Shown here in pieces: positions 31,457 through 53,409 of a stretch of 64,000 nucleotides of DNA. This DNA comes from Klebsormidium nitens (lineage: Eukaryota > Plantae > Klebsormidiophyceae). The translations under genes and the position numbers were made by a program. The DNA lies in the NCBI GenBank assembly GCA_000708835.1, contig DF237008.1, positions 196,235-260,234 on the forward strand, written 5' to 3'. Below the pieces are notes generated by a model. The model worked only from the letters and a program-made list of their open reading frames with translations. It ran no database searches and was not told where the DNA came from. Position 1 is the first letter of the stretch; each line of letters starts with the position of its first letter.

Positions 31457-33515
31457 TCACCGGTAATGACCCCACTCGGGCCCCGTGGCCGCAAATTGCG
31501 GCGAGCTGTGATGGTGCACGATATGCCAAACGCCGCCATGTTTTTCAAAACAGTTGGTTGCGATCAGGGGTTCCTCCGCCTGGTTCACGAACTCCTTGAG
31601 CGTGACCCAAGCCATTCGACCGTCGACCCGACACCGCACGTCCCGCAGGTCGAAATCGTACCGTTGGCCCCAGCCAAACACCACGCGCCAGCTGGCGATG
31701 ACGGCGTCGTACCTGGAAAAAGCAAAAGGGAACCCGTGAGGGAAAACGGCTTTTATTCAGAAACATGGGACACGCAGGACAATGGGTTCCGCCTAAAGAG
31801 AAAGTAGAATCGTCTGCGTCTTTTGAGGTTCTGCTTTTGGTTGCTCCTGAACGTCGTATGCTCAGTCAACCAAAGAGCCTTGAGACAACAGAGAAGGAAG
31901 AAAGCGGGCGGACTAGCTTGGCGCCAGCTGCAGATTCGTCGATGATTGTTCTGCGTAAGTTGTTTGACATGGACTTGGTCCGGAAGCTGGAAGAATATGG
32001 AAAAGCTGAATGCTGATGAACTTGGGGTTGAATGCAGCCAACAGGTCGAGTGTATGTGTGTTCCAGAAGTTGCGATCTGGAAACACTTCCACTTCTCTTT
32101 GGTGAGAACGCCCGAATCCAGACATCGCTCAACGATTAGAAAGAGATAATCGGGTGCTCTAAGAATGCTGCTTGAATTGGGACTTCAATTGAAAAAAAAC
32201 GCTGTTTCAGTTTCAACAAAGCTGCAGACACTGGCAGCGAACTTGAGAATCAGCACAAGCCAACCTCACAAGTATCTTCAGGTTCGACTTTGACCTCTGA
32301 GAAGGCAACAAGTTCGGAATCAACAGGAGATGAAGGAGCCATTGGGGTCTCAGGCAGGCCGGTAGAAAGAGGGCACTTGTCCGGCCGGCAATCGGGTGCG
32401 TCGGCAGTCCATACCCTGTTAGCAGCACTCCCCCTGGATGTATGCACTTGACGTAGTCCGCGTTTAGCCACAGGCCCGCCATCGCGAACAGCGACTTGCT
32501 CGAAAACACACTGTAGAACCTCTGGTTCGCCTCGGTCACAGCTTTCGTCGCGGAGTAGTGCACTTTCCAGCCACTTGGCGGCTGCAGCCTGTCTTGCTCA
32601 GTCGTGAAGTCCTGAACGAGCGGAACGAATCAGGACACCGAGTCAAGCCGGCTTCATAGACTCAGTTACACGACGCCGTGCAGAATATACGGCAAAGAGA
32701 ACGACTTGGTGACTTCGTTATGGGTTGCAGCACGACTGAGCTCAACTTGTGCGGCTGACATAAAGATGGCAGAAGCAGGGCATAGAAGCAACTACAGCGT
32801 TAACATATCAAGGTGGTGTCCTCTCTTTGTCGTCCTGATGAGCAGGAAATGTGTCGAGGAAGATTTGAGGGGGGAGAGTCAGTAACCTAGAGGGAACTTT
32901 TACAAGCCAGGCGAGAAAGTCCAACAACTATTAACTAAGAAGACTGTGAGAAAATATGTTGCCGGGAGATGAGTTGATCGCACAGGCTGTCAAAGAAGCA
33001 ATCTGCTGAAGGTGCCCAGAATCAAGGGGCGCAAGTGGAGACGGTACTGCATACATCAAGCAGCTATCTCGCAGGGCTCATTTGAGCGGTTCCGATGAGC
33101 CGCCAACTTCTAAGGCCAGTGCTTGCCAAGATGAATCTGTAGACTTTGAAAAGTTTCTCGTGCTCACCACATGGAACAAATGCTTCCACACCCTGTCGTC
33201 GTTCGCCAGCACCCGCATCGTTGCTGATGTCATGCTGACCGAGCACAGGCTTTGGTGGTCAAGATATGACAGCAGATACGACAACACCTCTGGCACTAAT
33301 TGCTCAATGAGACAGCCTTTTGTGTCTATTGGGGGCTGCACAGCAAAGGCTGGTGACATTGCTCGCCTTTTCCGTTTTCCCTTGGGTCCTCCAGTCACTT
33401 TGAAGATGTTTCGGCGTGCAATGAATGTGAAGACAGCCGTGCCCAGAAGACAAGTGATACAGGTTGTCGAAATTGGGTATGTGTTGTCCGCTGCACTTGC
33501 TCTGGCGTCCTCCAT
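31457..33515 (-). CDS. SKIP8: F-box + SnoaL-like (NTF2-fold) protein, SKIP8 homologue, 266 aa
   Basis: Three exons: 33515-33168, 32611-32415, 31712-31457 (801 nt). F-box: EQLVPEVLSYLLSYLDHQSLCSVSMT...DDRVWK. Then DFTTEQD...GWK.HY, LWLNADYVKCIHPGG, MAWVT, TNCFEKHGGVWHIVHHHSS, as in plant SKIP8. Confidence 0.93.
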
Positions 33516-35151: not shown

Positions 35152-36622
35152 CGAATGTTATCTGCTCGCTAGTGAACAGAATGGTGGTCCAGGTCATGCA
35201 AGCAGCAAATTTACTTGAGCCTGAGGCTGTACCTGGGCTGTGTGCCAGCTCGCGGAGAGCAGTGTTGCATGGCGTTCCGCCTTTGGCAGAGTCTTCCTTC
35301 CCGAGAATCCAGGCTTGCTCCCTCGTGCTTGTGAACGTTTGGTTCTCCGCAAATCAGGTTTGACCTGAAGGTTTCGCTGGCGAAGGAGTTGCCTTATGAT
35401 TCATATGCATCCTGTTACGGTTTCCTGTGGGATTCGAGCTTCTGGAAACAGCGTTTCGTAAGTGCTGGCAGGCTACCAGTGTATTTGCCGGACAGCGCCT
35501 TGAGGTGTGGGCCACGTACGGCAGCGAGAAGCAGGCTCCTTGGGCACTTCATCCAGTAAGTACAATATTCCATCTTGTGAAGCCAGCTTGAAAGAGCTTT
35601 CTCAACGGAGCTCGGCTGCTGCTGTCTAAGCTATATCCTCTGGGGGTTGCCCAGAACAGTTTCAAAGGTGTTGGGCCCCAGAAGGCGAATAAGTCAATAT
35701 GCAACTTGTCTGCTGAGGACAAAGTATTTGGCTGACAGAACCCTGAGATTCTTTGAAGGGAATGACACTCTTCGATGAGCTCTCAAAACATGCGAATGTA
35801 CGAATGTACTTGTGAGTCTACGTTTACGTGCTTCAGAAGTGTTGTTGCTTTGGTCTAGCCCAGTGTCCAGGTCTGTTGAGCGATGATTGTTGTGCGCATG
35901 TTCCTTAGAGCCTCTGGTTGCAACTTGTATTTCTAAGAGCTGGCTGTGCATTCAAAGCTCTAAGTCTATCTCCTTCTTAAAGAGGTGCATCTGCCAGCTT
36001 GATTGACCACTGAGCTAGCTAGTCATATGCACCTTGGGGTCAAAAGAGGCTGCATCGCTTTGCTGCAAGGCTGGTACCACACACACCATAGTTGCTATCA
36101 GGTTGATGTGAAAGCAGGATTTCACCCTTATCTTTCTGTGTCTGTCTCACGGGCTGTATCCTTGAAGCAAGTACTTGCATTTAAGTGGAACAATTTAGGT
36201 TCCTAACATGAAAGACACCTCATGGTCTTCTCGGAATCTTTAGAAACTTGGTCCAACCTGAGAGCTCCTGGAGGAAGTTGCAATGAAGTAGGCTTACTCA
36301 GCCATCAGGTCAGCTGTGCTGCTGAACCATCTTTTAACCAATCTAGTGTTGGAAGTTGCTTAAGAGCCCGTCGTCCTTCCGAGGGTCTGAGGGACGAGTA
36401 TTTGCTTGGGAAGCTTCATCGCCAACCAATTGTTGGATGAGCACTTTGTGTCTTACAAATTGCAGCGTTCTGCTTCATTTTCTGGTGGTCGAGTGCTTCA
36501 GTGTCAATTTACCACCTGATCCTCACTTGTATTCCCCGACCAAGCTGTCTCTATCTGTGTTTGCTGACTGAGTGATGCGGAACTGCAGGAAAACGCCAGA
36601 ACCTTGTTCATGTCGCTGTTCC

Positions 36623-39600
36623 ATGGACACAGCGGGGCTGGTGGATGCATCAGCAGCAGTCGCAAATGAAGATCAGGCTCATGCCCTCAAAGAGCTCGGA
36701 GCGGGTGTAAGGTTTGGAGCTGAAGCAGACCCTGGTCTTCCAGAAAATATCAGTTCATTCTCGTTGGACGGGTTTTCCGAAGACTCTTCGACGGTTGGTA
36801 GCCTGTCTTTACCCTCTTCAACGTTAGGAATTTTTGATCGAAGCAACGCCGGGAAGGTGTCTGTGGGGGACAGAGGCCAAGCGGTGGTCGACAGCGATTG
36901 CTGGCAGTTTGCGCAGAGCTTGGCAGCGGCCAATGGATGGCTGCCACATGGTTCGCATACAGTGGTAGAAGTGGTGCAGGCTGCCGTCAGCGCAGAGAGC
37001 GAGAGCAAGAAAGCTGGGGTTGGCGTGAAGCATGACAAAGCTGAAATGAGTGTCAGGATGGAGCAAGAGCAAGCAGACCAGATGTCGAGCAGGGCCCCTC
37101 GTAGCTGGGGTGTCGGGGCTAGTGCGGGGGGTGGCTTGGAGTCTTTGGAGGGGTCTGTTTCTGCGAGCAAGCAGGAGTTGCTTGAGCAAGCACCTGAGGG
37201 TGCCATCCCCTCTGACTGGATTGAGCAGCTCAGAGACAGCAAGTTCGATGATACGCCCAACGGCCATGGGCCTTCAGCGCTTCAGAACGCCCACGACGGG
37301 AAGCTCCCCACCAGGCGTCCGGAGCTGAGCATCAACGTGAGCGGCCTGTCCGAAATGGACGCGGAGAGGGCCCTGGAGGACGGGAGCCAGGCATCGCCCC
37401 ACGGGACCCCTAGCGAGGTGGTCAAGACGCGGGTTCGGCTGGTTAAGAAGGAGGTTAGCGAGCCATCAGCTGCGGCAGCCCCCCTGCTCGATGGCACCAA
37501 GCGCAAGAAGAAGCGTGTGGAGTGGCCGGCACCCGATGTGGCGGGAAAGAAGCGGCGCCTGTCGGATGGGGGTGGTTCAGGAGGTTCCGAGGAGGGTCTG
37601 GGGGCGAGCAAGAAGGTGGTGAGCCTGGACCGCTACAAGGCCTTCACGAAAGCCCCGAACATGCTCATGGCGAAGCTGGTGGACGAGAAGGCCCTGCTGG
37701 AGGGGACGTACGTGCAGTACCGCGGCAAGCAGGACGAGGTGCTCAAGGAGGGGCATGCATTCAAGAACGGGATCCTGTGCCGGTGAGGTTCCGGTTGTGG
37801 CCTACAGCAGACTGCTGGTGTGTCCTCAGTTACTGGTGGTTGGTAATTAGGGAGGGCTTGGCACTGATATTGGAAAAGAGCATTCTGCTTTATCTTTTGC
37901 CTCTGGCACCTGCAGCAGGGCTGTGGAGGTTGATATGTTGACTAGCTGCAACAAAAAGTGGTAGAAGAAGTCTCGGTTGAGTTAGCATGCACCAATATGC
38001 AGAGCAATGAAGGCTGACAAACATTGAAGCCAAGCTATCCTGATTATACTTCTAGGTGCTTGCCTGTTGCTCGTCAACCGCGCTGCCGGTTACAGAACTG
38101 CATTTAGCTTTCTCTGAAGCCATGATAGTGGTTGGTTTTCCCCATCATGATGCTTGTCTGAGCACTCTCTCGCGGCCTGTACGTTACGGCCCGCAAACCA
38201 ACTCTTTGGCATGCAAATCAACCCGCAAACATTCATCTGGTCCCGAGCTTTGTCAGTGAATTTGTCTCTGTGTCGATGCAAATTGCGTTGGAACTGGAAA
38301 GTGACGCTTTGCCGCAACAGCGGCCCCAGGCCGCGCTAGGTTGATAGCTTATGGTTGCCGCTTGCGACCTGCAAAATTGGCCATTAGACTGCCCCATCTA
38401 GCAACTTATGCGCGAACCTTTCCGTCCCCTCAACCTGCAGATGCTGCAATGTGCTCAAGTCCCTGAGCGAGTTTGAGCGCCACGCGGGCAGCAGCATCCA
38501 TCGCCCGAGCGACCGCCTCTTTCTTGAAAATGGCATGAGCCTCAAGGAGCTGCTGAACAGCAGCAAGGCGCCCGCAGTAGAATCGGGTCATGCTGTGTCA
38601 AAGGCCCTTGCCTCGCCTGAGTCGCAGCTTCCAGAGGGCTACGAAGACGGGAATGATGACCTGTGCAGAGTTTGCGGGGACGGGGGCGAGCTTATTTGTT
38701 GCGACGCGTGTCCTGCCACCTTCCACCTCAGCTGCATGAGCTTGGAGGTGCGTTCCTCGTCTGGCTGTCCTAGTTGACAAACTCTGTCCAGCGCACCTGG
38801 TGCAATTGAGGACAAATCACGAGGTTAAAGTTATTCAAGTGCTAAGTTCAAAGCCCAACAGAAGGTGTTCGGTTATGGATCTTATCACCTCAGCTTGTCT
38901 TTTCTCGCAAGCCAGGCTGAAGATATAACCCGTTCACATATGCGAGGTGCGCTTGTATCAGCGGGACAGTTCGCAACGATAGAGGCATGTGACTTTGATG
39001 TTGCGGAGCAGTCATAGAGAGCTTTTTCTCACTTGGTCATTTGTAGGTCTTCATATCTGGTCCAGTCGACACTGTCTGGAGCTTGTACTCTACAAACAAA
39101 GTCGATTATTCTGATGGTGTCAATCTTGCGCTTGCAGGACCTTCCAGACGGCAACTGGTACTGCCCCTCGTGCCGCTGCAGCCACTGTGGTGCGAGCGAC
39201 TTCACCCCAGACGGCTTTGACAGCCGCACCGTCCTGCTGTGTGACCAGTGCGAGAGAGAGTGTGAGTACGCTGTCACAGACACGCCCTTTGGTCAGGTCG
39301 ATTGTGTAAGGTGCTATGAAGATCCTTCACTCCTGGTCTGCAGAGGATTTCAGCCAGGAACTGGCAAGCAAGGATGTCCTTTTCTGGCAGCATTTGAATA
39401 CTCACTTTGAAACAGGGGCTACCTTTGTTGCTTATTCATCTCGTATTCACGTCCTCCACCTCTTGGTGAATGAGGGCTTGCATCGGCTCCTGACTACGAC
39501 TGTCAAATGAGCCAAATCATGTGTCTGGTCTCGTAGGCAGGTTCTTTAAGGTTCATCTTGAAAAGTAGGTGCAAAAGAAAAGTGCTCAAGGTAGACACCA

Positions 39601-42600
39601 ATCCTTGCAGTCCACGTCGACTGCCTCCACAAGATGGGACATCCCCAACTGGATTCCCCCCCAGAGGGCGACTGGTTCTGCAGTAGCAGCTGCGAAGCAA
39701 TCGCCGTCATGCTGAAAGCCATTCTGGGACGGAATATGCCGCTGGGGGGGGGTTACGCGTGGACAATCCTCAAGGATGATGGGGAGGGGGTTGCCAACCA
39801 GGGTTTATTGGGGGGGGAGGAAAAAGGGCTGAGCGAGACGGAGAGGGCCAAGAAGGGGGGGGGCAAGAAGGACGACGAGAAGCGCCAGCTGGCGTTGAAA
39901 AGCAAGGGCAAGGCAGCGGAGCTTGAGAAGGGGTACAGGTGAGGTGCCGGGAGCCTTCGGACGCGTTCTGTTGAGAGTTCTCGTAACTTGTGGTCGAAGC
40001 TAGGAGACTTTCGCTTGATTGCTTGGACGGAGTCGACTTTCTCGAGTGTTAAGGAGTAGCGTGTTGTATGCTGCAGCATGCAAAGGGTGCTTTGGTGCTT
40101 ACTTTTGTGTGGTCAAGGTCGCGTCCGGTTGACAGGCAACAAACGGTTTTCAGTGGAGGCACAACCTGCCGCATCATTGCTTCACATATTTGTGATGCTC
40201 TGAATGTGTTTGCTCACTTTCTCCTTCATCCTTGCATTTGCTCTCTTGACAAAGTCAGCCCTTGAGGTGGTCTGGAAAAAGCTAAGTTTCAGTAACCTTA
40301 CAATCTCTTGTCTCCGTGTCCTTCCGTATGCAGGATTGGAGCCAAGCGCGAGAAGCTCCAGGCTCCGACCGACCCGTCTCCGAGACCACCCTCCGCCAAC
40401 CAGTTCCTTCCTCACCAGCCCCAGAGCCTGAGCAACGGCGTCAAGAAGTTGAGCACTCGACCTTCCGGGATAAATTCCGAGATCAGCGGCCAGGATGGCG
40501 CTATCGGGCCGGAGGGGCAGCCCAAGAGGGGCCGGGGGCGACCCCCCCGAAAGGCTAACGGGTTCGACCATGGTGCGGCAATTGGTCTTGAGAGGGGCCC
40601 GAGTGCGGATATAATTGCGGGAGGAACCGGGTTAACCAGCCCCGTGTCAGAGCTAACCACTCCCGGGTCGACTCTGACCACCCCAGGTTCCACGCTAACC
40701 ACCCCCGGGGCAGAACTGCCCACCCCAGGTGGGGGGGACCGGATGGCGGTGCTTTCGAACGGGGAGCCTGTGTCGCTGACTAGGAATGGGAAGCGGCGTG
40801 GTCGGCCTCCGAGTGCCTCCGGGGGGTCCCCCCAGAGCCCAAGCCGGGCGAGAAGCCGCATCCGGAAGCGGAAGTCGAAGCATCCCAACCAGTGGACCAG
40901 CGGGCGCCACTCAGACCAGCACACCCAGCCGAGCAGCGGTGTGAATGCCCACCCAGGCGTGACTGTGCATCCGCATGAGAATGGGCACTCCATGGAGGAC
41001 AAGCATCCTGGCACGGAGGGGCATTCGAAGATGGAAAGACACGTGGGTGTGAATGGGCACTCTGGTGAGAGGAAAGGCTATTTGCCGGCGGAGACGTTTC
41101 TGCAGGGTGCACCGCTGGTGCCGTTCAGCAAGCTCACGCAGCTGCCCGGGCCGCCAGGTGGCGCGTTGCCGGAGCACAAGCCGAGCACAGACCCCTCTCT
41201 GCTGGCGGGGATAACCATCAAGCTGCGCGGGGATAGCCCCGATGGAGCCCACCGGCCAAACGGGATCCTGCTCGACATCAAGCCGGCCGCAGAACCGGGT
41301 CTCGGGCATGGGGCGACAGAGCCCGGTGCAGGAGCCGTTTTCAGAACGAGCATCAAGCTGGAGGGCCCTCCAGGAGCGGCGCTCGGGTGTGTGGATGGGC
41401 ACTCAGGGGGCCATGTTGTCTTCTGCTCTTCCATAGGGGCGGACGGAGTTGAGCGGGGAGCTTACTGTGGCGAGCCGTGCGGCGGGTGTGTCGGTGAGGG
41501 CGAGAGATGTGTCGGTGCGCTGAAGGGGGGACTTGCGCGGTGCGCGAAGCCAGGAGGAGAGCCCGTGACGGCAGTCGATATGGAAACGACAGGGGGAAAT
41601 TGCGCTGGAAAAGATGAGAAGCAGTTCAAGGACGAGGCTGCAGCGGGTGGTGCATTGTTCGAGGCAAAGGAAGAAGCAAACGGGTCGGAGAACGAGGGCG
41701 GGCTCTTACTGGAGGCAGGAGGCGTGGAAGAGATGCGAGGAGAAGGGGCTGTTGCTGCGGAAGCTGACGCTGTTATGGGGAGGCAGGAAGGGAGCGAGAC
41801 GGAGGTGGGACAAGGAACTGAGGGGTCTGCTGTCGGGAGAAAGGACGGCGAGCCTTGCGAGGCCGTGCCAATGGCGGAAGACGGCCCAGCCTCAGCATCT
41901 GATTTGGCCGCAGTTGCGCGCAAGGTCGAAGCAGAAGAGAGCGCTCTTCCTGTTGTCGCCGCAGAATCCCTCCTCGAACCTAAGGAAGAGGAGGTTGATA
42001 CAGTCCGTGTCAAGCAAGAAGACAGCATGGGGGAGGGGGAAGAGAGGAGTCTTTCTGCTGAGGGCGTTTCTGCTGAGGGCGTGCCTGCGACCGCCCCCGA
42101 AGAGACGGACCCCGTGAAAGTGCTCTCGCGGTCGGTGTCGGAGATCCGACGGCTGCGGAGCGTGCACGAGATCCCGGAGGTGCACGAGGACGAGGGCGAG
42201 TTCCAGGACATGTTCGAACTTCTGGGCCTTGTCAACGAGGCCCAGGATCTGGAAGCACAGGACCCCGCTGCCGAGGACGCGCCGCCGGCGGCCGAACAAG
42301 GCCCTGAGGTGAAGCTCGAGGCAGCGAGGCAGGAGCAGCAGGTGGAACCGTCGCAGGGGGGCAATGGGCAGGCAGCCCTGCCCCCCCACATGCGCGCGGA
42401 AGCTCCCCCCGGGGAAACAGGAGGGACGTTTAGCCTGGGGATGCGGAGGACACCCACGTGGGCCCAGGACCTGACGCTTCTGGACGGGACATACGCGCCG
42501 GGGGGGGAGAACGGCAGCGCGCTGGCCCCCCCGTCGGAGGAGCACCGGGCGCAGGGGGGTGCGGCGATGCCTGGCTCGCTGAATCGGGCCCACCCCCTGC

Positions 42601-45197
42601 AGAGCCTGGTTCTAGCGAAGGGCGGGGCGAGGGCGGCCGGCGGCTTGGCGGCGGGGATGAGGTCAGCGGGCGTCAGCAACGGTGTAAATAGGCAGGGGTC
42701 GATGCGCACGGCGGCGGCGAGGCGGAAGAAGCTGGGGGAGGCGCTGGCGGTGATGCAGGAGTGCTTCCATCCGATCCAGGATAACCGCACCAAGGAGGAC
42801 CTGATCCCGCAGATGATGTACAGTAAAAGGTAGGCCGCTGATGGGTCGAGAAATTGTGCTTTCTGTCCCTTGATTAACATGCGTCGTTCGAATGTTGCCC
42901 AGCCTGTCCGTGCGGAGCCGTATCAATCAGAAGCACAATTCTTTGCTTTTTTGGGACCCAGAAAGAAATTCTTATAGTGGAATGGTGGAGGTACTTTCTG
43001 TTGCTGACTAAGAATGAGGAGCATCTCTGCATTCAGTGTCAAGTCACAGGCCCTGCTTCTATTGCTGGGCACTCGAAGGACTCTGCTCACTCAAAACAAG
43101 CCCTTTCTGCTCCTGCTCCCCAAGCTTCCACCAACTAAATCTGACGCACCTTGTGCGCCTACCTTGAGCGTAAATATGCTTTACTATCTTTTGCACCAGT
43201 TCAACATCCTTCATACAGGTCGTGCACGTTCTTGATGTGTCTCCCGTCCCTCTCGATTCCAACTTCGTAAGATCAATCCGTCCTTTTCACGCAGGACTGC
43301 GTACCACGACTTTGGCGGGTTCTATACGCTCATCGTCGAGAAGAGCGACGAGGTGATCAGCGCCGCTGCCATCCGCATCTTCGGCACCAAGGTCGCGGAG
43401 CTGCCACTTGTCGCCACCAAATTCAGCTACCGCAGACAAGGCATGTGCCGGCTGCTGCTGACGACCCTCGAACAGGTGGGCACACAGAACGTCCCTTGCT
43501 GGACGGCTTTGCTTCGACCTTGCATACTCCCCAGATGCAGGGTGGCTCGGGCTGCTTAGCGTTCCTTCTGGCGAGGACTGTCTCATAAGCTGCCGAGTGC
43601 GGGTAGCAAAACAGCAGAATCACACGCGGGTTACTTGCGGAAGGCAAAGAGTCAGCCTCTTCACATAGTGGAAGTTTTACTCTTCGCCTGGGAGACCATG
43701 TGAAGGGTTTAAGGGTTTAGAACACGCCAATCATAACAAGGCAAAGCAACTGGACGATTTCAGAAGATGCTACTTCTCTCTCGTACACAGATCCTGTTCC
43801 GGCTGGGCGTAGAGAAGCTGGTGCTGCCCGCCGTCCCCGACGTGCACGCCACGTGGAAGGGCGCGTTCGGCTTCCAAGACTGCTCCTCCGAGTCCCGCAA
43901 GGCGCTCTCCGAGCTAGAAATCATGGTCTTTCCCGGAACGTGCCTGCTCCAGAAGTCGGTCGCCGACGCAGTCTCCAACCACAAGCAGACGGCAATTTCC
44001 GCGCTCGTCGGCGCGACGCTACAGAGCGTCGTGCACGATTCCGGGGGCGCGGAGAAGCCGAACGACGGCGTCGCGTTACCGTACTCGACGCGGTGGGAGC
44101 TGTCGGAGTGGGAGGACCTCGCGCGGGCGGCGCAGCCCCCCCGGAATGAGGAGGAAGGCGCGCCGGGGGCCGAGGCGAAGCCGGCGGTGCCGACGCTGAA
44201 AAGGAAGCGGTCGGGCATCAGTTCGCCGGTCGCTGGGTCGTCAAAGGGCTTCCGGGGATTGCTGACGCGGGACGAAAGAGAGGTCGGACAGCAGCGGTTT
44301 GTGAGCCCGGGAGGAGCAGCCCCCGGCGTGTATGATAGCAAGGAGGTGAGTGGCAGTTGGTACGCTTGGATCTTTATCCGTATCAGACAAACAAAAAGCG
44401 GTCCTGCTAGGTGGATTTTGAAAGGGCGCTCGACATGGGCGCTCGACATCTGTCTGAGGAATGAAGCTGGGTTTAGAAGGCGAGCTGCTGCATGGTCAAC
44501 CAGGCCTCTCAAAAGGGCACAAGGGCTTTGAATTGTCCTTGGCAACTCGATGGTCATCTGCGGGGCAACACGGATGTGCAGCACACTTTGCAAGTTCTTC
44601 TGTGCAGTCTCCGCCTTTCGTAGGGGAAGTCGAACCAAGGGTTACCAGCACACTCAATTGACCCCTCTTTGGCAGGCGGGAGTCGCCGTCAGTCGCCCGT
44701 TGCCAGCCAGCCAGGCCGTGCTGGGCTCGACGAGTCAGGCCCACCTTCCCCCCGGGCACGAGCGGAACCTCAGCGGAGGCCAGCGGGACTTTGCCGGCTG
44801 GGAGGGCGTCGGGGGAGACATCCCGTCCGATCTCGGAATGGACGGCGAGGATTTCGACCACCTCTTAGCCAACGCCGAGAAGTGGTGGGCGCCCGAGGGG
44901 GGGCAGAAACACACCAGCAAGGCGTCCCCCCACGTGCAGCGCCGCGCGCTGACCAGCCCGAAGCCGTCCCCCTTGAAACGGACGAAGAGCGCGAGCCCCT
45001 TCCCGGGGGGTGCGCAGCCCGCTCCTGGGGCGGGAGGGGTGCCGAGCGGCACGACGTCCGCACGCAGCAGCTCCAGTCCTCGGGGGAAGAAACCGGGGCG
45101 GAAGCCAAAGACCCCAGAAGGTGGACCCGAGCAGTCGCTTCCGCCGTCGCCGTCCGATCGGGGGCTGGCAGCCAGGGATCCCCTGGCTGGCGGATGA
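36623..45197 (+). CDS. Tify/TDBD-PHD-PHD-GNAT histone acetyltransferase (IDM1/ROS4-type family), ~1890 aa
   Basis: Exons 36623-37782, 38441-38747, 39138-39261, 39611-39938, 40334-42829, 43295-43475, 43791-44345, 44676-45197 (5673 nt, phases match). Tify-like: [24 protein letters not shown]1: [28 protein letters not shown]...[13 protein letters not shown]2: CSHCG...[14 protein letters not shown]...GDWFCS. GNAT: [14 protein letters not shown]...FGGFYT...[22 protein letters not shown]...RRQGMCR...[10 protein letters not shown]...TWKGAFGF. The start codon is uncertain (36572-36623). Confidence 0.92.
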
Positions 45198-46490
45198 AGC
45201 TGCAGAAGGGGTCCAACGGCTGGGCCGTCGTCGCCAAGACGGGCGTCGCCGAAGGGGATCCCCCGGCGCTGTCGCTTGGGCCGAGCTCCCCGCAGCGGGG
45301 GGCGAAGAAGCGGCAGTACCTCCCCCCCCCGGAGCCGGGCTTCCCGGGCCCGGAGGCGGAGGGCAGCTCGCACGGGGGCCGCGCGTTCCCGAGCCCGAAG
45401 AAGCGGCTCGCGAGCGGGAACGGGGACTACCCCCCCGGCGTAACGAAGGAGACGGTGCGGAAGGAGGGGCCGCGGACGGGGCCCGAGTGGCTCGAGGCGT
45501 TACTGGCGGTCAAGTTCTTCCAGGGGTGTAAGAACCACAATGGCGAGGCGGGGAAGAGCCTCCCCCGGGAGAAGGAGTGCAACCTGTTCTGCACGGACTG
45601 CGCGGGCGGCGCACTGTGCATGACGTGCGTGGAGGGGCACAAGGAGCACCGCATGGTGCAGGTGAGGGGCGTCCCCCTGTGTTTTGTTGTCTTAGGCTGG
45701 TGTTGACTTCTGTTCGTGCTTTTTAGTCTTAGGCTTGTATGACTTTCGTTCGTGCTTAACATTCCTCTGGCATCCTTCCCAGTCCGACCTTAAACAGTTG
45801 GAAACGTCCCCGACTCTGCGGCTTGCAATCCTTCTTGCCGGACCTTAGGTTCATCAAACTCTTCTGCTTTGTCGGTAGCCTTGTTCCATTCGTTTCCGGC
45901 GTCTGGAAGCATGCTGTTGCTGTCATGAGTTATGCGCCAGTCGCTTGGCCGGCTTTTGGGCGCGAAGGTTTCCATTGACGTGCTTGCAATCTACTGATTA
46001 TCATTTCCCTTCTGTTTGCAGATCCGACGGTCCTCGTACAACGACTGCGTGCGCATCACCGACATCCAACGGCTGTTGGACTTCTGGCAGGTCCAGGTGT
46101 ACACCATCAACGGCGCCAAGATCGTGTTCCTCAATGAGCGCCCGCACTCCAATCCTAACCGCGGCAAGACCGCCGCGAAGAGCAACGTCACCGCGTGCGA
46201 GATCTGCTGCCGCATCCTCGTCGACAACGTGCGCTTCTGCTCAGTCGGCTGCAAGGTGGGTTGCTCAGCAGCCTTCACTTTCGGAATCAATCTCGTCACA
46301 GCAGAGTTTATGAGCTCAACCGAAGATCTGTCAATGCGCATCAGTTGTTGCGGATATCGTCTTTCCAAAAGGCGACTGCTACTTAGGATTTTGTATTCAG
46401 GTTGCCGGGACTAAGTTGCCGGAGGAGGGCTTTCCGAATTCTTATGCATGCGCCGGCCAACAGATCTCGTTTCTGGACTGCTGTGCTTAA
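45194..46490 (+). CDS. PLATZ zinc-dependent DNA-binding domain protein (263 aa if independent; possibly the C-terminus of the upstream gene)
   Basis: Exons 45194-45661, 46022-46255 and probably 46401-46490. Motifs: PEWLEALL...FFQGCKNH...ECNLFCTDC...LCMTC...H...VQIRRSSYNDCVRITDIQ...VQVYTINGAKIVFLNERP...CEICCRIL...RFCSVGCKV. The last exon is less certain. Confidence 0.9.
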
Positions 46491-47824
46491 GCTGCCCAAG
46501 GGAAAGCGGGTTTTCAGACTCTCTGACCATTGCTTCTCGTGGCCCTTGCAGCTGACCTGCATTAAGCGGGGTGCTGCTGAGGATGCCGCATTGACCTTGC
46601 AACCTTTACTGAAATGATAGGGGCTGAGGGATATCAGGTGGAAGGTCAAAATAGCTTAACAATAACCGTGTCGGCTTTGGCACGCTTGTAGAGTAAAGGC
46701 AAGAGAAGACGTGTAACTTCGGAAGTTGCCCAGAGTGTGTTTGAGGACCATCTGCTGGCAGGTGCTGTTGAAGTTGATCAGGGGGGAAAGGCAAGGTAAT
46801 GGGCGCGTGCGATCGCTTTGCAACTTTGGCATGGGGAGATGTGACGAAAGGTTGTTACTGAAATATGGTCAAGATATCTTAAAGCATGGTGCGCACACTT
46901 ATTTCCACGGCCGGAGCATGGAACGCCTGTGAATGCTTTTGAAATTAGTTGCCCCTGTATTATGATGCCATTCACCTGCAAAGCACACGGGCAACTCTCA
47001 TCCACCGAAAGGCTCTGAGCGCACTGGATTCGCATTCTTACGCGGCTTTAACAAGCATGTACGTAACGCAAAGTCGTCATGTGATCTTACAAACTGTTGC
47101 ATGGAAGTATTTGAATCATAAGTGACCATTGGTATTTCTATTGCAGAATCCTCTAGCATGTGAGCCTGGTGGACTCACGCACGACATGCAGATTCTACGT
47201 ATGGATCTTGTTCGTATGCTGCTGGCCCGGCATCTTGTGTTGAAAGTGTTGCGGCTTACACATGTGTGGCGTTGAGCTGATCTCATGGCCCCGGGTAGGT
47301 GATAAGTCATCTCATGTATGCACACATATTTGATAACCAGCTGAGTTCATTTCAAAGAGGCTCGTGAGTCACTGAGGAGATTATTGCCATACAATGATCC
47401 TTAAACGAAATCCGGCATGTGCGTGACGCATGTCAACCTCAATCTTGTCAACATTGGTAATCAAACTGCTTTGCACAAAACAAGCTTGCTTATCCGGCCA
47501 TGCAATGTACGTTGACTGTTGGTTTTTATTGTAGTCAACTTGTCAACTGTAGCCTGCTTGGGCACAACCGTAGCAGTAATCAGCACGAGAGCTTAATTGT
47601 GCTCAATCATCCACCAGACCTTTGCAGCGAAGACCTGGCCTTTACAGCTTGACTGCCCCCTCACAACCTTCTCGAGAAGATCTTGCTATTCCTCTATTTG
47701 CCATGAAAGCCTCAAATGAAGTTTTCCAAGTCAAGTTCAGGTCTCTTTGAGAACCAAACTTAACTTGAGAATTGCTTGCTCGCATGCAAGCTCGCCTGCC
47801 CAGAAAGCTACAGAGTTGTACATC

Positions 47825-49527: not shown

Positions 49528-52500
49528 ATGGCGTCTTCCGCCCTCAGCAGCATAGAGGATTCAGCAGAACAAACAGCTCAGAGGAACCCTGATCCAAAAA
49601 CCGCACGGCAGATTCGTGCAACACGAAAGTCCCTCACGACAGCCTCCAAGAATGTGAAACCAATCTCGACAGCCCCGCTTCTCCACGCCAAAGAACACGA
49701 CGAGGCCGGTGAGAATGCGCCTAGCACAAGTAGGAGTTCCCGAATTTCAGGGGTCCGGTTGAAGACGTCCAAGCAGGTTTACGACCTGGTTCGCACTAAC
49801 CCCAGCTACGATGGGAAGAGGTGTCACATTGTGTACCACGACAGAGTGGCTGACAGATACATGCGGACGGCGTTGGCGGACTGGACCCCTGCGAGCGCGC
49901 AGGGAGACGTGCCATGGCACCGCGTGTGGTGAGTGCTTATGCTTGGGGGAGGACAGCTTATGTATACAATGCCATAAGATTTGGGAATCATTAATGATCG
50001 TCTGGGGAAGTTCTACTAAGCTGGAGGGAAAATGGACCACGTGGGCTGGCTTTCTTTTGATTAGCTGAGCTTAGGACTGGACTCCTCAATGAAACGTAGG
50101 TCCTTGAGCTGATTTGCCATTGAGAGAGCTTGAAAGGCTACCTGGTTGCGAGAAACGGCTCTCCACTTTGAGTACAAGAGACTGCGATCAGACAAGATAT
50201 CGTGCGATGGCAATAGCAGTGCATTTTCCTAGGGCCCAGGGTCATCCAGAGATGTTCTTTTCAGCGTTACTTTCTTACTTGCGGCGCCATCGAAAGTAAA
50301 TTCGACCCTCAAGCAGACCGAGAATGATGCTGAGAGCGAAGTCGAGCAAGGTGAAAGATTACGACGTCTTGCCCTTAGAAAGTCAAGACACCTCTCTTTC
50401 TCTCTTCCCTCTCAGCGCCTTCAATGTGCTGTCAGTTGTCCACCTGCAAATAAGCCCTTTCCAGACTCGCTGTAATTCAGCATATATTGGACTCTCTTCT
50501 TTTTTCCAATGATGGGTTTGTGTACGGAATATCAGTGACATTAATGTGGTCTGTCTCTTTGGTGGCACTAACGGCGTGCTGCACCATTCTGCCCTCAGGA
50601 GCGACTAACTGACCAGCCCATCCTAGTTTCTGCTCTATGAAACTTTTAGATAAGAGAACTTACTTTCTGGCACTCGCGCCTCTGCGAACTGCGGTGGAAA
50701 AGCCAGCCTTACTGCTTCGGGCGGCACTACTCACAGGTGCAAACATGCCGAGAGACACGTTAGTGCACACGGGGCGAGCTTTGCAAGCTGACCAGCAGAT
50801 GTGCCGCACTATTCTTGCAGGAATCTGTCTGAGCCAAGGGCTCATCGAGCAGAGTTTCCAAACTCGAACCATACGGCGGACTCAAAAACATACGGACAGC
50901 AGACTCAAAGCTTTTGGACAGCAGCTTGCAAAACCGAGCTCCTTCAATTTCATGATATCCCAGGTTCTTCACATACAACGGGACCGTTTTCTGGGACCGT
51001 GAGCGCCGCTTCTTCGACCACTGCCTCCTGCGCCGCCTTGCTTCCGGTGATGCCGCCCCGTCCTACGAGAACGTGACACGCGGCGCCCAGCAACTGGCCG
51101 AAACGCTTCCTCGCGACTTCCGATTGGCAACTTTGAACCTCCTTGCAGGTCAGAGACGCTCATATTTTATGCTAAGCATCTGACAGCAACTCCACCTTCT
51201 GCGATTTTCGAAAGCATTGTTCAATGAGAGCTCCTCAGTATTTCTGGTAGTTTTGGCTCTCCCAATAGTCCTACCTTCGCGTTTCAAAGGTGTGGTGAAA
51301 GTGCCTCGTTTGTTGGACGTGCTTCGTCCAATCACGCATACAGCTGATACGTTAAGGGCGGATAAAAAAAGGAGAGAGGTCTAGCCACCATTTACCCCGC
51401 CCCGGAAGAGCACGCTAGGCCTGTGCAGCACTTGCCTAGTCATTGCTCAATGCGTTCGTTTCTCTTCCGATTCCTTGTTCCTTCAATGATTGTCTTTTCT
51501 ATCGTCGCAGGTGCCAACTTCCGCAAAGACGTGGACCCAAACCCACCCGTATCAGACGTCTCCAACGTGCTGCGAAGTTTGGACGCTGACGTCATCATGC
51601 TCCAGGGGTGCACGAAAGAGACGCTTGAGTTTCTCGAGGAGCAGAACTGCGTTTGTGAGGGTTATGAGGTTAGTCACACGAATTTTCTCGGTAAAGATTT
51701 GCAGTGTGAAGGCACGCTTTAGCTGAACGTTTGATCTAAACATCTTTGCTGAATGGACGCGTGCTGCTTGCTAAAAGATCCAGGCATTCTTTAGTTGAGT
51801 CGTACTTTAGCAGATACTTGAGCTGGTTTAACTTGAAGTTGCGTAGGCTTCGTTAGTTCAACCATTGGAAAAGCTTCGGAGCTTGAAGTGGAAGTGCTTC
51901 TTTAAACAACAGAAGGCTGAGAAACTACGATTACGCATTCAAGGGCTCGAAACTGGCAGATTGAGGTAAAGTCCGCGTTGGGGTTGATGTCCTCCTTCTG
52001 ATTGAGCTTTATTAAGCACTTCGTGCCAGACTCCATACGGATCACGATATTCAAACCTACGACTCGGTCCCGTCTCCACCGAATTGAGACGTCGCAAGGG
52101 TCAAGGGAAGAAGCCAAAACGTTTTGGATTGAATCGCTAAGCCTGAGACTCCAATGAACGTACTTTGCTACGTGTCTTGCAGATGGTCTACTCAGACTTG
52201 GAGCCTTCCGGCCAGATCACGCTCGCGCGCGCCCACCACAAGCGAGCATCCCAGCACAGCCTTTCGGCGTCGAATAAGAGAGCGCTCAGAGTCTGCCATA
52301 AAACGGCGAACGGTGTCGACTTCGAAACGTGGAACGTAGACTTTCGAGCGTCGACAGGGGAGAGAGACAGCATTTCTGAACGTGCGGGGAGGCGGTTGAG
52401 TAAAGACGGAACGGCGCCGAGCGGAACGCATAAGACCGGAACGGAGCTGATGAGCCAGCTCGAGCAGTGGACGTACATCTCGGAAACTTATGCGGCCATC

Positions 52501-53409
52501 GTAGCGGGCAAGTTGATCCAGCCTTCCCGGATCCTCTTTCTGACAATCTGGTGTTTCCTCTTCCAATCTCGACGTCGAAAGCTCAGATCCCCGTGCCTGA
52601 ATGTTGCTCACAGTTTCGCAGCATGATGCACAACAGTGTGATTGGGCTTCAACTCAAACCGCTATCAGCTTATACGGCTTGTTTCGGTCGCCAGAAAGGC
52701 GTCGACAGTGTGTCATCTGTGGCACAGCAGAAGCAGAAAGCGACATGGCCTTCCTCGGATTCTGAAGCCAACAAAGCGACGTTCAAAACACTCTTCCGCC
52801 CACATTTCGCTTGCCCCGCGGCCGTCACAGGCGAACTTGGTTTTGGTCGTGGCGCATTTTCAGAAGAAAGCTCACAAACATCTTAAGGAAGTAATTTGAA
52901 TTACCGTCAATCTGCAAGCAAGAAGAAAAACCTCGGTCCTGAAGGAAATACCTGACGGTCGACTGGCGGAACGAAAGCACTCCATCAATCAAGCCATACA
53001 GCGAGTCCGCTCTGTCTTGATCGCAGGTGACTTCGGATTCTGTGGCCGGAAAGATGACGACGTCGGGCCTTTCAGCCAGAGTGCGGATCGCGATTGGTGC
53101 GACGCGTGGCTCTCGGGTCGGCACCCGGGGGAACCCCCCGTGGACGAAAAGAACAGTTCACAAGCAGCGGAAGGGCAATCGGGGGATACTTCCCGAGCAG
53201 TTGACTCTCGGTGGGCGGTTGGAGGGAAAACGTTAAGCCGCCCAGATCGTATCTATACCCGGTCCTCACAGTTTGTGATCAAAAGCGCAAGGACTTTCAG
53301 GGTTAGCGGGTCGGACTTGTTTCAGCACTTCGAGGTCGTGGTAGACGTACACGTGGACCCGTCGAGAGCCGTCGATGACTGGGAAAGGCTGGAAACGCCT
53401 GGGCGGTGA
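49528..53409 (+). CDS. MJ1316-type RNA cyclic-end recognition domain fused to a degenerate exonuclease-endonuclease-phosphatase (EEP) domain, 483 aa
   Basis: Exons 49528-49928, 50964-51148, 51511-51668, 52183-52507 (GC donor), 53027-53409 (1452 nt). MJ1316-like: LKTSKQVYDLVRTNP...IVYHDRV...GDVPWHRVWFFTYNGTVFWDRERR. EEP-like: FRLATLNLL, LDADVIMLQGC, SGQITLAR, IVAGDFG, RPDRIY, FQHF. Confidence 0.85.

What the first reader, a model, noticed from the sequence alone, without database searches (positions are those of the whole stretch)
44676..46490. PHD-GNAT acetyltransferase stop overlaps the PLATZ start (ATGA): fusion, frameshift or dicistron
Seen: the TGA at 45195-97 overlaps the ATG at 45194-96 inside one continuous GC-rich exon, leaving no room for a terminator or promoter. 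The PLATZ frame is open back to 44669. Alternative AGs at 44691-92 and 44709-10 (CCAG x3) would join the GNAT exon in frame to PLATZ, and one extra G in the G5 run at 45160-64 would also fuse them. Established: IDM1-type proteins and PLATZ factors are normally separate. Inference: either a chromatin reader/writer carrying its own PLATZ DNA-binding domain, a splice-switchable fusion, or stop-start reinitiation. A homopolymer sequencing error is a real possibility.
Basis: partly seen in the sequence, partly recalled or inferred. Interest (0 to 1): 0.75.

Follow-up and report, generated by a model that had tools for sequence, protein, structure and literature searches.

The report
One-base assembly gap splits acetyltransferase-PLATZ gene
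The overlapping stop and start codons come from one G missing from the genome assembly; the alga's own transcripts and two related genomes show a single 2161-residue protein that joins an IDM1-type histone acetyltransferase to a PLATZ DNA-binding domain, a combination I could not find described elsewhere.

Summary
TGA 45195-97 overlaps ATG 45194-96, the coding frame switches there, and a G5 run lies at 45160-64.

The overlap is not biological. Spliced RNA contigs from four runs in four studies all carry one extra G in that run. With that G, exon 8 (44676-45661) is 987 nt and stop-free. The ten-exon gene then reads as one ORF of 2161 codons. Two RNA contigs cover every exon from 41600 to about 46894.

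Two diverged genomic contigs from relatives (L001, L002; dS 0.15-0.9) have all ten exons in the same order. In both, exon 8 is in one frame, with an extra base exactly where the window lacks one.

The locus is therefore one gene: TDBD, PHD, AT-hooks, IDM1_C (GNAT), linker, then a complete PLATZ domain. Dicistron, reinitiation and alternative-acceptor readings are refuted.

The fusion is conserved in this algal group. It was absent from the PLATZ proteins I could list (top 150 of 670 representatives, plus 10 long ones) and from the paper library.

The parts
36575..37782 (+). Exon 1, with the inferred start ATG at 36575. N-terminal region with no Pfam family; its end begins the TDBD region.
   Evidence: ORF; GT donor read; collinear tblastn matches in L001 and L002; no Pfam hit. 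Splice sites and start codon are inferred and were not checked against RNA here.
38441..38747 (+). Exon 2: TDBD (Tify-domain-binding domain) plus the first PHD finger.
   Evidence: Pfam PF16135 E 4e-10 and PF00628 E 3.7e-6. 96% and 90% aa identity in L001 and L002.
39138..39261 (+). Exon 3: first half of a second PHD-like Cys/His finger, split by an intron.
   Evidence: Cys pattern read from sequence; conserved in L001 and L002. No Pfam hit for the half alone.
39611..39938 (+). Exon 4: second half of the PHD-like finger plus a linker.
   Evidence: Phase fits T|TC = Phe across the e3/e4 joint (inference from sequence).
40334..42829 (+). Exon 5: 832-codon low-complexity linker with two AT-hooks (core GRP) and the first residues of the IDM1_C domain.
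   Evidence: ORF. RNA contigs cover 41600-42827 and join to exon 6. AT-hook motifs at aa 720 and 810 of the model. 78% identity to P0159.
43295..43475 (+). Exon 6: IDM1_C / GNAT core, including the RRQGMC acetyl-CoA motif.
   Evidence: Pfam PF23209 E 1.4e-24 and PF00583 E 4e-4. Joints confirmed by 4 of 4 RNA contigs.
43791..44345 (+). Exon 7: end of IDM1_C plus an acidic/basic tail.
   Evidence: Pfam PF23209 E 5.5e-13; joints.
44676..45661 (+). Exon 8: conserved linker, an AT-hook-like PGRKPK, and the N-terminal zinc region of PLATZ. 986 nt as assembled, 987 nt in RNA and in L001.
45160..45164 (+). G5 run that is G6 in transcripts: the one-base gap in the assembly that creates the false frameshift.
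   Evidence: table 4: G put in behind 45159 in X1, X4, X7 and X13. L001 has C and L002 has G in the missing column.
45194..45197 (+). Apparent ATGA stop/start overlap. In the real frame it is an internal Met codon (…GWRMKLQ…), and the TGA is out of frame.
46022..46255 (+). Exon 9: PLATZ domain (PF04640) with the C-x2-C…C-x3-C zinc site.
   Evidence: Pfam E 1e-26; alignment with PLATZ proteins; joints.
46552..46617 (+). Exon 10: last 21 codons and stop TGA at 46615-17. The 3' UTR runs to about 46874-46894.
   Evidence: Joint and contig ends.

Best explanation
This is one nuclear gene of ten exons (36575-46617, + strand). Its mRNA encodes a single protein of about 2161 residues. The protein has an IDM1-type chromatin module (TDBD, PHD fingers, IDM1_C GNAT acetyltransferase), long disordered linkers with AT-hooks, and a complete PLATZ zinc-dependent DNA-binding domain at the C-terminus.

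The stop/start overlap at 45194-97 is an artefact. The assembly has G5 at 45160-64 where the real sequence has G6. With the sixth G, the GNAT frame runs straight into the PLATZ frame.

Inferred mechanism, not tested: the PLATZ domain and AT-hooks tether the PHD-GNAT acetyltransferase to A/T-rich DNA. That would replace the methyl-DNA-binding route that brings Arabidopsis IDM1 to its targets. The PHD fingers would read the histone tail and the GNAT domain would acetylate nearby histones.
For: - RNA evidence (shown): four spliced RNA contigs from four studies all carry the extra G and have no other difference from the window over about 5 kb, introns included. Contigs X13-7 (7079 nt) and X7-12 (4691 nt) run through exons 5 to 10 without a break.
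- Reading frame (shown): with the G, exon 8 is 987 nt with no stops, and the whole model is 6486 nt with a single terminal stop. As assembled, it stops at codon 1907.
- Relatives (shown): L001 and L002 have all ten exons in the same order, and both halves of exon 8 lie in one frame. L001 exon 8 is exactly 987 nt.
- Missing base (shown): the DNA alignment has a gap only in the window, inside the G run.
- Junction peptide (shown): SDRG[AV][24 protein letters not shown] is conserved in all three.
- Selection (shown): dN/dS is 0.05-0.37 on both sides of the junction, at dS 0.15-0.9.
- Composition (shown): third-position GC stays in one frame through exon 8 in the relatives but jumps frame in the window.
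- Domains (shown): Pfam finds TDBD, PHD, IDM1_C and PLATZ. All PLATZ Cys/His ligands align with standalone PLATZ proteins.
Against: - G5 in the DNA is therefore excluded by inference, not by observation.
- One RNA contig (X4) has a private one-base loss in another G run (45297-302). This shows such contigs can carry homopolymer errors.
- Contigs cannot show transcript starts, so a separate PLATZ-only transcript is not excluded.
- Exons 1-4 and the start codon are inferred from sequence and homology only.
- No biochemical evidence exists for the proposed targeting mechanism.
Confidence: 0.9

Rival explanations
1. The sequenced isolate really carries a one-base deletion (G5). It would make a truncated 1906-residue IDM1-like protein without PLATZ, and the PLATZ part would be lost or made by reinitiation at the ATGA.
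For: The assembly reads G5. The Met codon at 45194 is conserved in the relatives.
Against: RNA contigs from four studies match the assembly at every other base, including retained introns, so they come from the same strain, yet all show G6. Both halves are under purifying selection in one frame in the relatives.
Confidence: 0.05
2. Programmed transcriptional slippage or RNA editing adds a G in the G5 run, so the DNA encodes two ORFs and the RNA fuses them.
For: Only the DNA/RNA difference at a homopolymer, seen in 4 of 4 runs.
Against: The relatives encode the extra base in DNA. In L001 it is a C that interrupts the run (CGGGGCGCC), so no slippage is needed or possible there. No mixture of forms was reported. 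A G5 run is short for slippage (own knowledge).
Confidence: 0.02
3. Besides the fused mRNA, an internal promoter in exon 8 gives a short PLATZ-only isoform of about 255 residues starting at the conserved Met at 45194. This could coexist with the fusion.
For: Met at 45194 is invariant in the three taxa. Standalone PLATZ proteins start 10-50 residues before the PxWL motif.
Against: Contig depth is the same over the GNAT and PLATZ parts, for example X1 192.9 against 191.6; this is weak evidence because depth is a per-contig mean. The 100 residues before PxWL are conserved, as is the sequence upstream of the Met. No protein of 86-273 residues matching this stretch was found in the database.
Confidence: 0.1
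4. A true dicistron with termination-reinitiation at ATGA, or alternative acceptors at 44691/44709 switching the frame.
For: The overlap and the in-frame alternative AGs exist in the assembled sequence.
Against: In the mRNA the TGA is out of frame. Only the 44675|44676 acceptor is seen in 4 of 4 runs, and it is conserved in L001. The PLATZ frame upstream of 45160 lacks the high third-position GC of coding sequence.
Confidence: 0.01

Closest known systems
IDM1/ROS4-type PHD-GNAT histone acetyltransferases of plants (Pfam IDM1_C PF23209, TDBD PF16135)
   Same: Same order of TDBD, PHD finger(s) and C-terminal IDM1_C GNAT domain, with the RRQGMC acetyl-CoA motif. Arabidopsis IDM1 is a histone acetyltransferase in the anti-silencing / active DNA demethylation pathway and works with methyl-DNA-binding proteins (PMC5462541; enzymatic details from my own knowledge of Qian et al. 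2012).
   Different: No MBD domain was detected. The protein is about twice as long, carries AT-hooks, and has roughly 590 further residues after the GNAT domain (about 460 of linker, then a complete PLATZ domain). Activity is untested.
PLATZ transcription factors (PF04640)
   Same: Both zinc regions are complete and align residue for residue with standalone PLATZ proteins. The 78-residue core is 47-62% identical to land-plant and algal PLATZ representatives. PLATZ proteins are zinc-dependent A/T-rich DNA binders (PMC11768212 and PMC9262033 abstracts).
   Different: Known PLATZ proteins are short: 148 of the top 150 representatives have 450 residues or fewer. Here the domain starts at about residue 2003 of a chromatin enzyme.
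Other long PLATZ fusions in databases (linker histone H1 + PLATZ in Chenopodium quinoa; UBX + PLATZ in Closterium; AIR9 + PLATZ in Musa)
   Same: PLATZ attached to another module. The H1 case is also a chromatin protein.
   Different: None contains PHD, TDBD or IDM1_C. Some may be merged gene models; this was not checked.

Membership tests
IDM1-type PHD-GNAT acetyltransferase | C-terminal IDM1_C (GNAT-fold) domain | tested here: met
   PF23209 E 1.4e-24 (profile 28-84) in exon 6 and E 5.5e-13 (profile 86-140) in exon 7, both above the cutoff of 33 bits.
IDM1-type PHD-GNAT acetyltransferase | TDBD plus PHD finger upstream of the GNAT domain | tested here: met
   PF16135 at 40 bits (cutoff 23.6) and PF00628 at 27.3 bits (cutoff 24) in exon 2. 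The second PHD-like finger is split by an intron and was not scored.
IDM1-type PHD-GNAT acetyltransferase | Methyl-CpG-binding domain, as in Arabidopsis IDM1 itself | tested here: not met
   No MBD hit in any exon scanned. Many IDM1-like paralogues also lack it (own knowledge), so this bears on orthology to IDM1 proper, not on family membership.
IDM1-type PHD-GNAT acetyltransferase | Histone H3 acetyltransferase activity | not testable with these tools
   Only the acetyl-CoA motif RRQGMC is seen.
PLATZ | Match to PF04640 above the gathering score | tested here: met
   93.7 bits against a cutoff of 25, covering profile positions 1-78 of 79.
PLATZ | Both zinc-binding Cys/His regions intact (N-terminal C-x2-H…C-x2-C…C-x2-C…H-x2-H, and C-terminal C-x2-C…C-x3-C) | tested here: met
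   All ligand columns are occupied in the alignment with six PLATZ proteins. The pattern definition comes from my own knowledge of Nagano et al. 2001.
PLATZ | Zinc-dependent binding to A/T-rich DNA | not testable with these tools
   Inferred from family membership only.
Eukaryotic dicistron / termination-reinitiation | Two ORFs on one mRNA, with the stop of the first next to the start of the second | tested here: not met
   The mRNA contigs carry G6, giving one ORF. The TGA at 45195 is out of frame.

The most novel reading that the evidence does not exclude
A streptophyte-type green algal lineage has kept, under purifying selection, a histone acetyltransferase of the IDM1 family that is hard-wired to a PLATZ DNA-binding domain and AT-hooks. 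Read as a 'Rosetta stone' fusion, this predicts that free PLATZ factors and IDM1-like acetyltransferases work together in land plants, with PLATZ recruiting acetylation or anti-silencing activity to A/T-rich DNA. No such link has been described.
Probability: 0.15. Interest if true: 0.6.

Novelty: new variant of a known kind. Interest (0 to 1): 0.4.

Why it matters
There are two practical points.

- **Assembly correction.** The reference has a one-base homopolymer error that cuts a 2161-residue gene into a truncated acetyltransferase and an orphan PLATZ ORF. Gene models and transcription-factor counts for this genome should be corrected.
- **A new domain architecture.** The corrected protein combines TDBD, PHD, GNAT and PLATZ. 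I could not find this combination among the PLATZ proteins I could list or in the paper library, yet it is conserved across at least three diverged lineages.

The fusion gives a testable idea of how an IDM1-type enzyme can be aimed at DNA without a methyl-binding domain. It also hints at a functional link between two plant-specific families that are studied separately.

Tried and rejected
- **Short intron inside exon 8.** I looked for one that could restore the frame. The only candidate read by eye, GT 45121 to AG 45205 (85 nt), gives the wrong phase, and the RNA contigs show no joint there.
- **Word search with the 156-residue PLATZ N-part.** No hit in the 86-273 residue range, not even a self model.
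- **HMMER search of 1.84 billion representatives with the 78-residue PLATZ exon.** 670 hits. The top 150 are all short except two unrelated fusions. The remaining 520 could not be inspected, and the window's own protein is not among the hits.
- **Word search for long PLATZ proteins using P0126 as a carrier.** Ten hits, none with PHD or IDM1_C. Candidates could be at most 1692 residues, and the words came from a Chenopodium PLATZ, so a 2161-residue alga-like fusion could be missed.
- **Metagenome scans.** A profile of exon 8 and a degenerate DNA pattern for the junction peptide both found nothing.
- **Paper searches.** PLATZ+IDM1 and IDM1+Klebsormidium returned 0 papers; PLATZ+GNAT+PHD+algae returned nothing relevant. 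Klebsormidium was only my guess at the organism, which was not identified here.
- The joined spliced protein was not sent to any search or folding tool. Exons were searched one at a time by reference.
Full report
**1. The observation**

In the window as assembled, ATG 45194-96 and TGA 45195-97 overlap.
- The ORF in the frame of the preceding GNAT exons (44550..45197) ends at that TGA.
- The ORF holding the PLATZ zinc region (44669..45706) is open far upstream of the ATG.
- A G5 run lies at 45160-64.

Pfam confirms the two families:
- IDM1_C (PF23209) scores E 1.4e-24 in 43296-43475 and E 5.5e-13 in 43794-44345.
- PLATZ (PF04640) scores E 1e-26 in 46022-46255.

Third-position GC, which is very high in coding sequence here, is in frame 0 from 44676 to about 45000. 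It is ambiguous up to about 45190 and is then in the PLATZ frame. So the description is accurate, and both frames really are coding on their own sides of about 45160-45190.

**2. What the transcripts show**

I laid the contigs of four public runs from four different studies, under two organism labels, on 41600-47400. The contigs skip five GT..AG introns (42830-43294, 43476-43790, 44346-44675, 45662-46021, 46256-46551), so they come from RNA.

- All four contigs carry one extra G 'put in behind 45159', that is G6 instead of G5.
- No other base differs in any of them. That includes low-depth unspliced contigs lying on three introns, so the RNA comes from the same strain as the assembly.
- Contig X13-7 (7079 nt) and X7-12 (4691 nt) run without a break from exon 5 through the GNAT exons, exon 8 and both PLATZ exons to about 46874-46894.
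- Only the 44345|44676 joint is seen.
- X4 alone lacks one G in a different run (45297-302). This is a reminder that such contigs can have homopolymer noise, but the 45160 difference is unanimous.

With the extra G, exon 8 is 987 nt with no stop, and the junction reads …[27 protein letters not shown]…. The ATG at 45194 is then an internal Met codon and the TGA is out of frame.

**3. The whole gene**

- Exons 5-10 are fixed by the RNA joints.
- Exons 1-4 were placed from ORFs, GT/AG sites and phase and from collinear matches in relatives.

The ten exons are 36575-37782, 38441-38747, 39138-39261, 39611-39938, 40334-42829, 43295-43475, 43791-44345, 44676-45661, 46022-46255 and 46552-46617. With the extra G they give 6486 nt and one terminal stop, which is 2161 codons. 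As assembled, the frame stops at codon 1907.

Domains along the protein:
- TDBD (PF16135) and a PHD finger in exon 2.
- A second PHD-like finger split between exons 3 and 4. It was not scored because the halves must be searched apart.
- Two classical AT-hooks in exon 5 and an AT-hook-like PGRKPK in exon 8.
- IDM1_C/GNAT in exons 5-7.
- PLATZ from about residue 2003 to the end.

In an alignment with six PLATZ proteins, the end of exon 8 and exon 9 together supply every Cys/His ligand of both zinc regions.

**4. Relatives**

A word search with the exon-5 ORF found two proteins:
- P0159: 78% identical, on a 20.8-kb Logan contig of SRR23617307.
- P0160: 57% identical, on a 117.7-kb contig of JGI metagenome 3300060284.

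I fetched their contigs as L001 and L002.
- tblastn places all ten exons in the same order in both. The two halves of exon 8, which lie in different frames in the window, are in one frame in each.
- L001 exon 8 is exactly 987 nt and stop-free, with the same acceptor and donor. L002 exon 8 is 1062 nt and stop-free.
- The DNA alignment shows CGGGG-GCTGG in the window, CGGGGCGCCGG in L001 and CGGGGGGTAGG in L002. The window alone lacks a base, inside the G run.
- The peptide across the junction is nearly invariant.
- Synonymous divergence is 0.15-0.44 to L001 and 0.4-0.9 to L002, so these are separate lineages. dN/dS is 0.05-0.37 on both sides of the junction.
- Third-position GC stays in one frame through exon 8 in both relatives, while in the window it jumps from position 3 to position 2 after about nucleotide 485.
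- Flanking genes are shared too: an F-box gene upstream and an MJ1316-domain gene downstream.

**5. Interpretation**

The simplest account is a one-base homopolymer deletion in the assembly. The gene is a single, conserved fusion.

I could not lay genomic reads, because the single calls for finding and laying runs were used. A real G5 in the DNA is therefore excluded only by inference:
- The RNA is of the same strain and reads G6.
- The relatives carry the extra base in DNA, and in L001 it is a C that breaks the run.

I give about 0.05 to a real deletion in the sequenced isolate and 0.02 to RNA-level insertion. About 0.1 goes to an additional PLATZ-only transcript from an internal start, which would coexist with the fusion. 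Dicistron and alternative-acceptor readings are refuted.

**6. How it probably works (inference)**

Arabidopsis IDM1/ROS4 is a PHD-GNAT histone acetyltransferase of the anti-silencing pathway. It acts with methyl-DNA-binding proteins (PMC5462541; my own knowledge of Qian et al. 2012).

PLATZ proteins are zinc-dependent binders of A/T-rich DNA (PMC11768212 and PMC9262033 abstracts). AT-hooks bind the minor groove of A/T-rich DNA (own knowledge).

The algal protein has no detectable MBD but has three AT-hook-type motifs and a PLATZ domain. I therefore propose that it is tethered directly to A/T-rich DNA, that its PHD fingers read the histone tail, and that it acetylates nearby nucleosomes. None of this was tested.

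**7. Comparison and novelty**

- Of 670 PLATZ representatives in 1.84 billion proteins, the top 150 are short. The two exceptions are AIR9+PLATZ in Musa and linker histone H1+PLATZ in Chenopodium.
- A search aimed at long PLATZ proteins gave ten, none with PHD, TDBD or IDM1_C.
- No paper in the library holds both PLATZ and IDM1.
- Two metagenome scans found no further copies.

These searches have known gaps. 520 representatives were not seen, there are length limits, and the window's own protein is missing from the libraries. The architecture is best called not found elsewhere so far, rather than unique. It is a new combination of two known families, conserved in one algal group.

**8. Limits and steps left out**

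- The organism was not identified.
A further note reports a protein with four PLATZ domains elsewhere in this genome (s1-351074; unchecked). If true, large PLATZ-bearing proteins would be recurrent in this alga.

Noticed in passing
window 45297-45302: RNA contig of run X4 alone lacks one G of this G6 run; the other three runs agree with the window. Probably homopolymer noise in that contig.
   Followed up: no
window 44317-44703, 45689-46046, 46226-46579: Low-depth unspliced contigs (depth 4-9 against 60-190 for the spliced form) lie on three introns. This suggests a little pre-mRNA or intron retention.
   Followed up: no
window 45661|46022 (PLATZ Q|IRR): The intron splitting the PLATZ domain sits exactly where two land-plant PLATZ models (P0030, P0025) carry odd inserts. 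This suggests an ancient shared intron position and retained-intron gene models in those records.
   Followed up: no
window 44776-44910 (exon 8): A block of about 45 residues ([12 protein letters not shown]…DIPS…GM[DE][22 protein letters not shown]) is almost invariant in the three taxa but matches no Pfam family. It may be an unrecognised interaction motif.
   Followed up: partly
database proteins P0126, P0151, P0153: Linker histone H1 (PF00538) plus PLATZ in one chain in Chenopodium quinoa (two loci) and in a Logan assembly; Spinacia P0152 (73% identical) shows PLATZ only. This is another chromatin-PLATZ fusion. Closterium has UBX+PLATZ (P0157) and Musa has AIR9+PLATZ (P0105, P0154, P0156).
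   Followed up: no
window 33078-33515 (-) and 49528-53409; L002 1698-2255 (-); L001 14455-14928: Gene order around the locus is conserved in the relatives: an F-box gene upstream and an MJ1316-domain gene downstream.
   Followed up: partly
window 39730-39860: Exon 4 also holds several G6-G8 runs. Other homopolymer errors of the kind found at 45160 could sit in such runs; this part was not covered by the RNA contigs I laid.
   Followed up: no
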